Below, in pieces: positions 33,046-33,784 of a DNA stretch of 64,000 bases. Numbering within the stretch: the stretch's first letter is position 1; each line of letters starts with the position of its first letter. Origin of the DNA: Octopus sinensis (taxonomy: Eukaryota); the NCBI RefSeq assembly GCF_006345805.1, contig NC_043011.1:12412464-12476463 (forward strand). The letters run 5' to 3'. The notes below the pieces were generated by a model. It saw nothing but the letters and a program-made list of their open reading frames with translations, did no database searches and had not been told where the DNA came from. The position numbers and the translations under genes are program-made.

Positions 33046-33296
33046 CACATATATAAGGACACAGGAAATGTGTCAAAGCCGACAGGAAGCGTCGATGCTT
33101 CCTAAGGCTATATAGGAGTGGTGTTATTCCCTTTATGGGACTGTCACGTTATGTTGACATTAAGCAACCACTCTATCACTCCACCACCGCTCATGTCTCT
33201 TTGAGACATTTAGAAATTCAATATTTCTAATTATGGTGACCAGTGAATAGATTTCACAGTAAATATATATATTTGCGAAGGTTAGGCAGGTATCTC

Positions 33297-33370
33297 AACT
33301 AGCAGGACTTGCTACCCTGGACTGATGACAGGCAAGACCCAGAAACATGCATGTCTTCAGGTTGCTAGTT
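33297..33370 (+). ncRNA. Type I hammerhead ribozyme (stem II weakened in this copy)
   Basis: CTGATGA 33322-33328; GAAA 33342-33345; palindromic stem III ACATGCATGT; GUC triplet 33353-33355. Stem I CCTGGA/TTCAGG plus distal AACTAGCA/TGCTAGTT. Confidence 0.85.
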
Positions 33371-33469
33371 CTAGCTGGTGGGGGTGCTTGCCTCCCCTTC
33401 ACAAATATAAGGACACAGGAAATGTGTCAAAGCCGACAGGAAGCGTCAATGCTTCCTAGGGCTATATAG

Positions 33470-33699
33470 CTATTTCTTTATTATCCACAAGGGGCTAAAC
33501 ATAGAGGGGACAAACAAGCACAGATATAGGTATTAAGTCGATTACATCGACCCCAGTGCGTAACTAGTACTTAATTTATCGACCCCGAAAAGATGAAAGG
33601 TAAAGTCGACCTCGGCGGAATTTGAACACAGAACGTAACGGCAGACGAAATACTGCTAAGCATTTCGCCTGGCGTGCTAACGCTTCTGCCAGCTCACCG
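33470..33699 (-). mobile_element. tRNA-derived SINE, family D
   Basis: 15-bp TSD CCTAGGGCTATATAG at 33455-33469 and 33700-33714. Confidence 0.92.
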
Positions 33700-33784
33700 C
33701 CTAGGGCTATATAGTGGTGGTGTAATTCCCTCTACGGGACTGTCACGTTATGTTGACATTATGCAACCACTTTCGCTCTCTCTC

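What the first reader, a model, noticed from the sequence alone, without database searches (positions are those of the whole stretch)
33051..33772. Retrozyme-like element: ~354-nt terminally redundant unit with a type I hammerhead ribozyme at the tip of a rod-like fold
Seen in sequence: the full hammerhead core is present, with CTGATGA (33322-28), GAAA (33342-45), palindromic stem III ACATGCATGT and the GUC triplet (predicted cut after 33355). Stem I is CCTGGA/TTCAGG, followed by an 11-nt bulge and a distal AACTAGCA/TGCTAGTT helix. Loop II CAAG is complementary to CTTG in that bulge, a possible tertiary contact. The ribozyme is enclosed by a 23-bp helix (33268-33290 with 33387-33409, 3 mismatches). 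The unit start recurs 354 bp later and ~120 bp are repeated. Established knowledge: non-LTR retrozymes of animals (mussel, coral, axolotl) are tandem units of a few hundred nt with type I hammerheads that yield circular RNAs. Inference: this is a cephalopod retrozyme copy, and the ~1.35-unit structure reflects reverse transcription around a circular template. Stem II (CAGG-CAAGA-CCCA) could derive from CGGG/CCCG by two CpG-to-CpA changes, so this copy may be slow or dead. I am not aware of a described cephalopod retrozyme but cannot check.
Basis: partly seen in the sequence, partly recalled or inferred. Interest (0 to 1): 0.92.

Follow-up and report, generated by a model that had tools for sequence, protein, structure and literature searches.

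The report
Decayed hammerhead retrozyme copy in octopus
A 354-nt non-coding repeat in an octopus genome carries a self-cleaving "hammerhead" RNA motif built like those of known animal retrozymes, but this copy is old, truncated, split by a SINE and has a broken helix, so it is a relic of a known kind of mobile element.

Summary
The hammerhead (HH) core, helices I and III, the enclosing helix and the 354-nt period are all there. A covariance model built from four experimentally tested retrozyme hammerheads (coral, mussel, two axolotl) picks 33316-33361 as the best hit in the window (25.3 bits, E about 4e-5). Chance look-alikes and 43 kb of Octopus DNA score 14.6 bits or less. The + strand RNA is unusually structured (z about -7 to -8), and the - strand much less so. 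Shared interspersed repeats show the window is octopod DNA. It also holds a Penelope-like (PLE) endonuclease remnant, and the element sits in a (TA)n microsatellite, a known PLE target.

The limits are these. Rfam's hammerhead models give no hit. Helix II has two A.C mismatches. There is only one ribozyme in 1.36 units. The fold is a long stem plus a multibranch domain, not a rod. No other copy could be retrieved, so family membership, activity and circular RNA remain untested.

Verdict: probably a dead copy of a non-LTR retrozyme or PLE-dependent element. It is a new member of a known kind and of modest interest.

The parts
33046..33404 (+). Unit 1 of the element. The period is 354 nt, and homology with unit 2 starts at 33046.
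   Evidence: 33046-33115 matches 33400-33469 at 96% (D4). GC is 43.5%. No ORF exceeds 44 aa.
33268..33409 (+). Long imperfect hairpin (about 46 bp) with the hammerhead at its tip.
   Evidence: MFE is -67.4 kcal/mol, z -7.3, on the + strand, against -50.0, z -2.8, on the - strand. Arm mismatches: 7 are G.U-compatible on + and 1 on -.
33316..33361 (+). Type I hammerhead motif: helix I 33316-21/33356-61, core CUGAUGA 33322-28, helix II hairpin 33329-41, GAAA 33342-45, helix III palindrome 33345-54, C17 at 33355 (predicted cut after it).
   Evidence: Sequence read. Only descriptor hit in the window. Model R1 gives 25.3 bits, E 3.8e-5. Controls score 14.6 bits or less.
33329..33341 (+). Helix II hairpin CAGG-CAAGA-CCCA. 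Pairs 10.1/11.1 (C33329.A33341) and 10.2/11.2 (A33330.C33340) are mismatches, so only two G-C pairs remain.
   Evidence: Sequence. cmsearch marks both pairs as non-standard. The hammerhead fold evaluates at -9.8 kcal/mol, against -16.1 with G at both A positions.
33297..33370 (+). Extended helix I: distal 8-bp helix 33297-304/33363-70 and an 11-nt bulge at 33305-15.
   Evidence: Sequence. The MFE fold uses a slightly different register.
33405..33469 (+). Unit 2, first part. It corresponds to 33051-33115.
33470..33699 (-). SINE-like insertion that interrupts unit 2. The target-site duplication CCTAGGGCTATATAG lies at 33455-69 and 33700-14.
   Evidence: An independent copy at 55592-55811 has its own duplication, GGTGCTGCAAAT. 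Flanks were printed. The family is present in O. bimaculoides and O. sinensis loci.
33715..33774 (+). Unit 2, second part. It corresponds to 33116-33175. The element ends here in (CT)n.
   Evidence: 33700-33780 matches 33101-33181 at 86-90%.
33011..33045 (.). Upstream (TG)n(TA)n microsatellite, the 5' flank.
   Evidence: Sequence.
33775..33847 (.). Downstream (CT)n(TA)n microsatellite, the 3' flank. Together with the upstream (TA)n it suggests insertion into a TA microsatellite.
   Evidence: Sequence. (TA)n is a preferred target of Naiad and Neptune PLEs (PMC8557442).
33848..34224 (+). Later 377-bp tandem duplication of 33471-33847 (SINE, end of unit 2 and microsatellite). It gives a third copy of the 33101-33176 segment at 34077-34152.
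   Evidence: 33471-33770 matches 33848-34147 at 96% (D2).

Best explanation
This is an old, dead genomic copy of a non-autonomous, non-coding retroelement of the animal 'non-LTR retrozyme' type in an octopod genome.

The inferred life cycle of the family comes from published retrozyme work and is not shown here. Multimeric + strand transcripts cut themselves after GUC with a type I hammerhead. The 354-nt monomers are circularised by a host RNA ligase. The reverse transcriptase and GIY-YIG endonuclease of a Penelope-like element copy longer-than-unit RNA into nicked (TA)n microsatellites.

This copy is 484 nt, or 1.36 units. It starts 45 nt after the cleavage-site equivalent and ends at unit position about 174, so its template was a multimer or a circle and not a cleaved monomer. 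It has one ribozyme, with two A.C mismatches in helix II. A SINE later split it, and part of it was duplicated in tandem. It cannot release a unit-length RNA.
For: 1. The hammerhead core and helices I and III are intact at the stated coordinates. It is the only such motif in the window, with 0.01 expected by chance.
2. Its architecture equals that of four tested retrozyme hammerheads. Model R1, built from them, gives 25.3 bits and E 3.8e-5. Contigs that carry the same core strings by chance score 14.6 bits or less. In 43 kb of Octopus DNA nothing scores above 9.1 bits.
3. The RNA structure is strand-specific. For the unit, z is -7.0 on + and -3.9 on -. For the hairpin, z is -7.3 against -2.8. 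G.U-type arm mismatches are 7 on + and 1 on -. The circular monomer gives z -7.8.
4. The period is 354 nt and GC is 43.5%. There are no ORFs over 44 aa and no protein relatives. This is within the published 150-450 bp and under-45% GC range (PMC7229834).
5. Both flanks are (TA)n, a known PLE target.
6. The window holds a PLE-type GIY-YIG ORF at 18630-19172(-). It has 1415 relatives, including an O. bimaculoides protein and long proteins whose endonuclease lies at the C-terminus.
7. Differences between units 1 and 2 spare the fold.
Against: - Only one copy of the ribozyme-bearing part exists in the 64 kb.
- No relative was found in the collections I could reach, and none of these covers cephalopod genomes properly.
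- Rfam hammerhead models give no hit.
- Helix II has only two pairs.
- There is one ribozyme, not two or more.
- There are no expression or cleavage data.
- R1 rests on four sequences and a shortened calibration.
Confidence: 0.62

Rival explanations
1. It is a terminal repeat (pLTR) fragment of an autonomous Penelope-like element, left as a partial tandem without the ORF, and not a separate non-autonomous family.
For: PLE insertions typically form partial tandems, carry hammerheads in their pLTRs and favour microsatellites. A 2026 preprint finds animal retrozymes homologous to PLE pLTRs. A PLE endonuclease remnant lies in the window. A related PLE locus, L013, has hammerhead motifs at the 3' end of its ORFs.
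Against: No RT or GIY-YIG coding sequence adjoins the element. The neighbouring ORF at 35027-35500(-) has no PLE signature: its only Pfam match is a weak DUF6451 hit, and by eye it looks like a LINE C-terminal fragment. The PLE remnant 14 kb away is on the other strand and shares no sequence with the unit. PLE hammerheads are minimal variants without helix III. This one has a canonical helix III and a long helix I.
Confidence: 0.15
2. The hammerhead resemblance is chance. The locus is a structured repeat of another origin, such as a foldback or TIR element or a local duplication beside microsatellites.
For: Helix II is not formed. Rfam gives no hit. There is a single copy. At 0.01 chance motifs per 64 kb, a 2-3 Gb genome would hold hundreds. 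The region is rich in other repeats, including a TIR element directly upstream.
Against: Several independent features coincide. The motif has exact retrozyme geometry and scores 25.3 bits. It sits at the tip of a + strand-specific hairpin. The unit is of retrozyme size in partial tandem. The flanks are (TA)n. A DNA-level palindrome would not show the 7:1 excess of G.U-type mismatches.
Confidence: 0.12
3. The family is alive, and the A.C mismatches of helix II are its normal state. A-to-I editing, which is very common in cephalopods (my own knowledge), turns both into I-C pairs and so switches the ribozyme on.
For: Both broken pairs are A.C, the mismatch ADAR enzymes edit best (my own knowledge). 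Replacing both A with G restores a 4-bp helix II. The ribozyme lies inside a long double-stranded stem.
Against: CpG decay explains the same two positions more simply, because both A sit in CpA and CpG o/e is 0.35. The copy is otherwise degenerate. There are no RNA data. Helix II itself is far too short to be an ADAR substrate.
Confidence: 0.03

Closest known systems
Metazoan non-LTR retrozymes (Cervera & de la Pena 2020, PMC7229834; coral, mussel, axolotl)
   Same: Type I hammerhead with 6-bp helix I, a 13-nt helix II hairpin and a palindromic helix III. Unit of a few hundred nt repeated head to tail. Non-coding, GC under 45% and a highly self-paired RNA. Found in a genome that also holds PLEs.
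   Different: Only 1.36 units and one ribozyme. Helix II has two mismatches. The unit shows no sequence similarity to the published units outside the ribozyme core. Copy number, cleavage and circular RNA are unknown. No cephalopod example turned up in the searched literature.
Pseudo-LTRs of Penelope-like elements with minimal hammerheads (Cervera & de la Pena 2014; Craig et al. 2021, PMC8557442)
   Same: Partial tandem structure, a hammerhead in a non-coding repeat, and insertion in a microsatellite.
   Different: No adjoining RT-GIY-YIG ORF. The hammerhead here is canonical, with helix III and a long helix I with an internal loop, not the minimal kind seen for example in L013.
Hammerhead-bearing satellite or SINE-like repeats of newts, schistosomes and cave crickets (named from my own knowledge and the introduction of PMC7229834)
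   Same: Type I hammerhead with a weak, palindromic helix III that allows dimeric action. Repeat unit of a few hundred nt.
   Different: Those form long arrays or very high copy families. Here there is a single short partial tandem.
Plant LTR retrozymes (PMC4918200)
   Same: A non-autonomous retroelement that uses hammerheads to make circular RNA.
   Different: Plant elements have type III hammerheads, LTRs, a primer-binding site, a polypurine tract and 4-bp target duplications. None of these is present here.

Membership tests
Metazoan non-LTR retrozyme | Type I hammerhead with the conserved catalytic core (CUGANGA / GAAA / RUH) | tested here: met
   CUGAUGA at 33322-28, GAAA at 33342-45, GUC at 33353-55. 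R1 scores 25.3 bits.
Metazoan non-LTR retrozyme | All three helices paired ('perfect helix topology', supplement of PMC7229834) | tested here: not met
   Helix I has 6 bp and helix III has 3 bp plus the UGCA loop. Helix II has C.A and A.C at its base and only two G-C pairs. This is expected for a decayed copy, but the feature is not met in this copy.
Metazoan non-LTR retrozyme | Head-to-tail repeats of 150-450 bp, from dimers upward, each unit with a hammerhead | tested here: inconclusive
   The period is 354 nt, but there are only 1.36 units and one hammerhead.
Metazoan non-LTR retrozyme | Non-coding, with no LTR, PBS or PPT, and GC under 45% | tested here: met
   ORFs are 44 aa or less. A six-frame protein search found nothing. 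GC is 43.5%.
Metazoan non-LTR retrozyme | Highly self-paired unit RNA | tested here: met
   The circular monomer folds at -131.8 kcal/mol, z -7.8, with 65% of bases paired. The structure is + strand-specific.
Metazoan non-LTR retrozyme | Dispersed multi-copy family in the genome | not testable with these tools
   No searchable cephalopod genome was available. The 43 kb of Octopus DNA fetched holds no copy.
Metazoan non-LTR retrozyme | Self-cleavage and accumulation as circular RNA | not testable with these tools
   This needs in vitro transcription and RNA data.
Metazoan non-LTR retrozyme | Co-occurrence with Penelope-like elements | tested here: met
   GIY-YIG ORF at 18630-19172(-). It has relatives in O. 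bimaculoides and O. sinensis.
PLE pseudo-LTR | The repeat flanks an RT-GIY-YIG ORF of the same element | tested here: not met
   No such ORF is next to the element. The remote PLE remnant shares no sequence with the unit. An internally deleted copy cannot be excluded.
PLE pseudo-LTR | Minimal hammerhead lacking helix III | tested here: not met
   Helix III is a 10-nt palindrome. Compare the minimal motif in L013.
Hammerhead ribozyme, Rfam families | Score at or above the gathering threshold of an Rfam hammerhead model | tested here: not met
   No hit at the gathering threshold. None at E up to 10 on 801 nt or on 91 nt.

The most novel reading that the evidence does not exclude
Octopus retrozymes may keep two A.C mismatches in hammerhead helix II as their normal state, so that self-cleavage and circular-RNA production depend on A-to-I editing of both adenosines (33330 and 33341). 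That would be a ribozyme switched on by RNA editing. The present data cannot tell this apart from simple CpG decay of a dead copy.
Probability: 0.03. Interest if true: 0.85.

Novelty: new member of a known kind. Interest (0 to 1): 0.3.

Why it matters
If a genome-wide search confirms a family, it would add cephalopods to the animals that carry hammerhead retrozymes. It would also give a ribozyme-made circular-RNA family in a lineage known for large brains, heavy transposon load and extensive RNA editing. It would further tie a retrozyme to (TA)n-targeting Penelope-like elements. This single copy by itself is a genomic fossil and changes nothing about how such elements are understood.

Tried and rejected
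Searches that found nothing useful:
- Rfam gave no hammerhead hit at three settings.
- A six-frame chimeric translation of the unit, searched against 5.8 billion proteins to catch spurious ORFs on other copies, returned none.
- Exact look-up of a window ORF found nothing on record.
- A pattern scan of metagenome contigs gave 10 hits. All are unrelated chance matches, mostly coding sequence.
- Scans of viral and prokaryote genome contigs with unit 20- to 26-mers found nothing.
- A literature search for sequence strings found nothing relevant.
- blastn and nhmmer of the unit against the window found only itself.
- blastn of the unit against 43 kb of Octopus DNA found nothing.

Ideas rejected:
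- The 81-nt segment 33101-33181 is not a native 3' module of the SINE. The independent SINE copy at 55592-55811 lacks it and has its own target duplication.
- A MITE or DNA palindrome does not explain the hairpin, because the structure is strand-asymmetric.
- The second hammerhead-like motif at 31321-31365 is not a clear sister copy. Its core is mutated, it lies in no repeat and it has no special fold.
- Nearest-neighbour energies cannot judge the hammerhead fold.

Full report
OBSERVATION

- CCTGGA (33316-21)
- CTGATGA (33322-28)
- CAGG-CAAGA-CCCA (33329-41)
- GAAA (33342-45)
- the 10-nt palindrome ACATGCATGT (33345-54), whose last GT plus C33355 make the GUC triplet
- TTCAGG (33356-61)
- an 11-nt bulge (33305-15)
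- a distal 8-bp helix, 33297-304 with 33363-70

Helices II and III are closed by loops and helix I is open, so the topology is type I. A descriptor scan I wrote finds this as the only hammerhead-like motif on either strand of the 64 kb. In 300 dinucleotide shuffles of the window, motifs of equal quality appear 0.01 times per window. That rate still means hundreds per genome, so the motif alone proves little. Rfam finds no hammerhead at the gathering threshold. It also finds none at E up to 10 on 801 nt or on a 91-nt slice.

INDEPENDENT TEST OF THE RIBOZYME

The supplement of Cervera & de la Pena 2020 (PMC7229834) prints four genomic retrozymes that were transcribed and tested for self-cleavage in vitro: coral Amil224, mussel Mg353, and axolotl Ax353 and Ax330 (Ax330 cleaved poorly as a monomer). 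All four hammerheads share these features:
- a 6-bp proximal helix I
- CUGA(U/G)GA
- a 4-bp helix II with a 5-6 nt loop
- GAAA
- a palindromic helix III of 6-10 nt (coral ACAGUACUGU)
- GUC or GUA

The octopus motif has the same geometry.

I aligned the four sequences and built covariance model R1 from them. Searching the window gave 33316-33361 as the top hit at 25.3 bits and E 3.8e-5 (rough calibration). Only the two basal pairs of helix II were flagged as non-standard.

Two controls were run. Ten metagenome contigs that carry the same core and the GAAACATGCATGTC string by chance score 14.6 bits or less. In 43 kb of Octopus DNA nothing scores above 9.1 bits.

RNA STRUCTURE

| Region | + strand | - strand |
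|---|---|---|
| Hairpin 33260-33415 | -67.4 kcal/mol, z -7.3 | -50.0 kcal/mol, z -2.8 |
| Whole unit 33051-33404 | z -7.0 | z -3.9 |

- Of 13 arm mismatches at the DNA level, 7 are G.U-compatible on the + strand and 1 on the - strand.
- The monomer permuted to the cleavage site and folded as a circle gives -131.8 kcal/mol and z -7.8. Other 354-nt pieces of the window give -68 +/- 21.
- That circular fold is a long stem plus a six-hairpin multibranch domain, not a rod.

The structure therefore belongs to an RNA of the same polarity as the ribozyme.

ANATOMY OF THE LOCUS

The period is 354 nt: 33046-33115 matches 33400-33469 at 96%.

Unit 2 is cut at 33469/33470 by a 230-bp SINE-like repeat, flanked by the 15-nt duplication CCTAGGGCTATATAG (33455-69 and 33700-14). 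It resumes at 33715 and ends near 33774 in (CT)n(TA)n. An independent SINE copy at 55592-55811 has its own duplication and lacks the adjoining unit sequence. The SINE is therefore a later insertion.

A 377-bp tandem duplication (33471-33847 to 33848-34224, 96%) then copied the SINE, the end of unit 2 and the microsatellite.

Without the SINE the element is 484 nt, or 1.36 units. It begins at unit position 45 and ends at about position 174, counted from the cleavage site. The template was therefore longer than a cleaved monomer. Both flanks are (TA)n. TA microsatellites are preferred targets of Naiad PLEs, and the CX2-5CxxC endonuclease linker was hypothesised to mediate microsatellite insertion bias in Neptune PLEs (PMC8557442).

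AGE AND DECAY

Units 1 and 2 differ at 9 of 124 aligned positions. CpG o/e is 0.35 in the window and 0.36 in the unit. It cannot be tested on one copy. It would also restore C10.1-G11.1 instead of the usual G10.1-C11.1 (my own knowledge of the consensus). The tested axolotl Ax353 ribozyme does tolerate a U.U at that pair.

The differences between units 1 and 2 fall as follows:
- four in predicted loops
- one A-U to G.U change
- one compensatory U-A to A-U change (33125/33163)
- one broken pair next to the SINE junction

A simulation of 8 random substitutions gives a joint probability of about 0.009 for at least one compensatory double change together with at most one broken pair. This hints that the two units already differed in a structured RNA template, a heterogeneous multimer. 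They do not look like two passes around one circle.

HOST AND POSSIBLE PARTNER

The window's SINE and other repeats occur in several copies, at 77-91% identity, in loci from O. bimaculoides (GCA_001194135.2) and O. sinensis (GCA_006345805.1). The window is therefore octopod.

ORF 18630-19172(-) has a GIY-YIG motif preceded by CxxxCxxC. It has 1415 relatives in the representative library. One is XP_052825841.1 of O. bimaculoides. Others are long proteins with the match at the C-terminus, one of which has a weak RVT_1 hit. This is the PLE layout.

A related PLE locus, L013, carries minimal hammerhead motifs at the 3' ends of a head-to-head ORF pair. The window's PLE remnant shares no sequence with the unit.

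WHAT IT IS

The best reading is a dead copy of a non-LTR retrozyme, that is, a PLE-dependent non-autonomous element (confidence about 0.6).

The mechanism is taken from the literature and is inferred here, not shown. Multimeric transcripts cleave themselves. Monomers are ligated into circles. A PLE reverse transcriptase copies longer-than-unit RNA into microsatellite nicks. This copy has a single, impaired ribozyme and cannot make a unit-length RNA.

The rivals are:
- a pLTR fragment of an autonomous PLE (0.15)
- a chance motif in an unrelated structured repeat (0.12)
- an editing-dependent live ribozyme (0.03)

COMPARISON AND NOVELTY

Retrozymes are described in a mussel and reported in many invertebrate phyla. 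A 2026 preprint links them to PLE pLTRs. No paper in the library mentions a cephalopod retrozyme or hammerhead repeat. This would be a new member of a known kind.

Membership is not established. Helix II pairing is not met in this copy, the requirement for two or more ribozyme units is not met, and copy number, cleavage and circular RNA could not be tested.

LIMITS

No tool here searches cephalopod genomes as DNA, and all attempts to reach other copies failed. The decisive step is a genome-wide search for the unit and its consensus.

Noticed in passing
window 31321-31365 (+): A second hammerhead-like motif about 2 kb upstream on the same strand. R1 gives 20.8 bits, E about 9e-4. The core is mutated to CUAGUGA. 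It lies between (CA)n (31138-56) and (CT)n(CA)n (31694-31730). The region has no unusual fold (z -0.3 and -0.8) and no similarity to the 354-nt unit. It may be a relic of another hammerhead-bearing element, or chance.
   Followed up: partly
window 33470-33699 (-); also 33848-34076, 55592-55811, partial 31984-32082: A SINE-like repeat of about 225 bp with a B-box-like GTTCAAATTCC and 12-15 nt target-site duplications. It is present in many copies in O. bimaculoides and O. sinensis loci. ARAGORN and Rfam do not call a tRNA in it.
   Followed up: partly
window 33471-34224: A 377-bp tandem duplication (96% identity) of the SINE, the end of the element and the microsatellite. It is younger than the SINE insertion.
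   Followed up: yes
window 18630-19501 (-): A Penelope-like element remnant. It has a 180-aa ORF with a CxxxCxxC motif and a GIY-YIG endonuclease, and an upstream 68-aa ORF (19295-19501) that by eye resembles an RT C-terminal part. It ends in a TA-rich stretch next to a LINE RT fragment on the other strand (18430-18570).
   Followed up: partly
window 32239-32917; second copy 12251-12787: An element of about 680 bp with 114-bp terminal inverted repeats (85% complementary), directly upstream of the microsatellite that flanks the hammerhead element. It looks like a MITE or foldback transposon.
   Followed up: no
window 20002-20920 and 40049-40466: Tandem repeats with a period of about 252 bp, also present in the O. 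sinensis locus L012 at 8952-9119 (88-91% identity).
   Followed up: no
window 44451-45725 (-): A minisatellite with a 63-bp (21-codon) period. It gives overlapping ORFs of 338-424 aa made of near-identical 'MLYHPVPCFTTQSHALPPSP' units. These are probably not real proteins.
   Followed up: no
window 8317-9022 (+): A pogo/Tigger-like DDE_1 transposase remnant (Pfam E 3e-18), split over two ORFs.
   Followed up: no
L013 9130-9173 (-) and 11358-11401 (+): A contig from an unidentified organism (ENA ERZ25066847, with no octopus repeats) has two PLE ORFs head to head. Each ends in a minimal hammerhead-like motif: CUGAAGA, a GC-rich helix II, GAAA, and no helix III.
   Followed up: partly
window 33305-33313 with 33331-33339: The helix I bulge can pair with the helix II hairpin at 8 of 9 positions. 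This is a fold that excludes helix II, and it may act as an inactive conformer.
   Followed up: no
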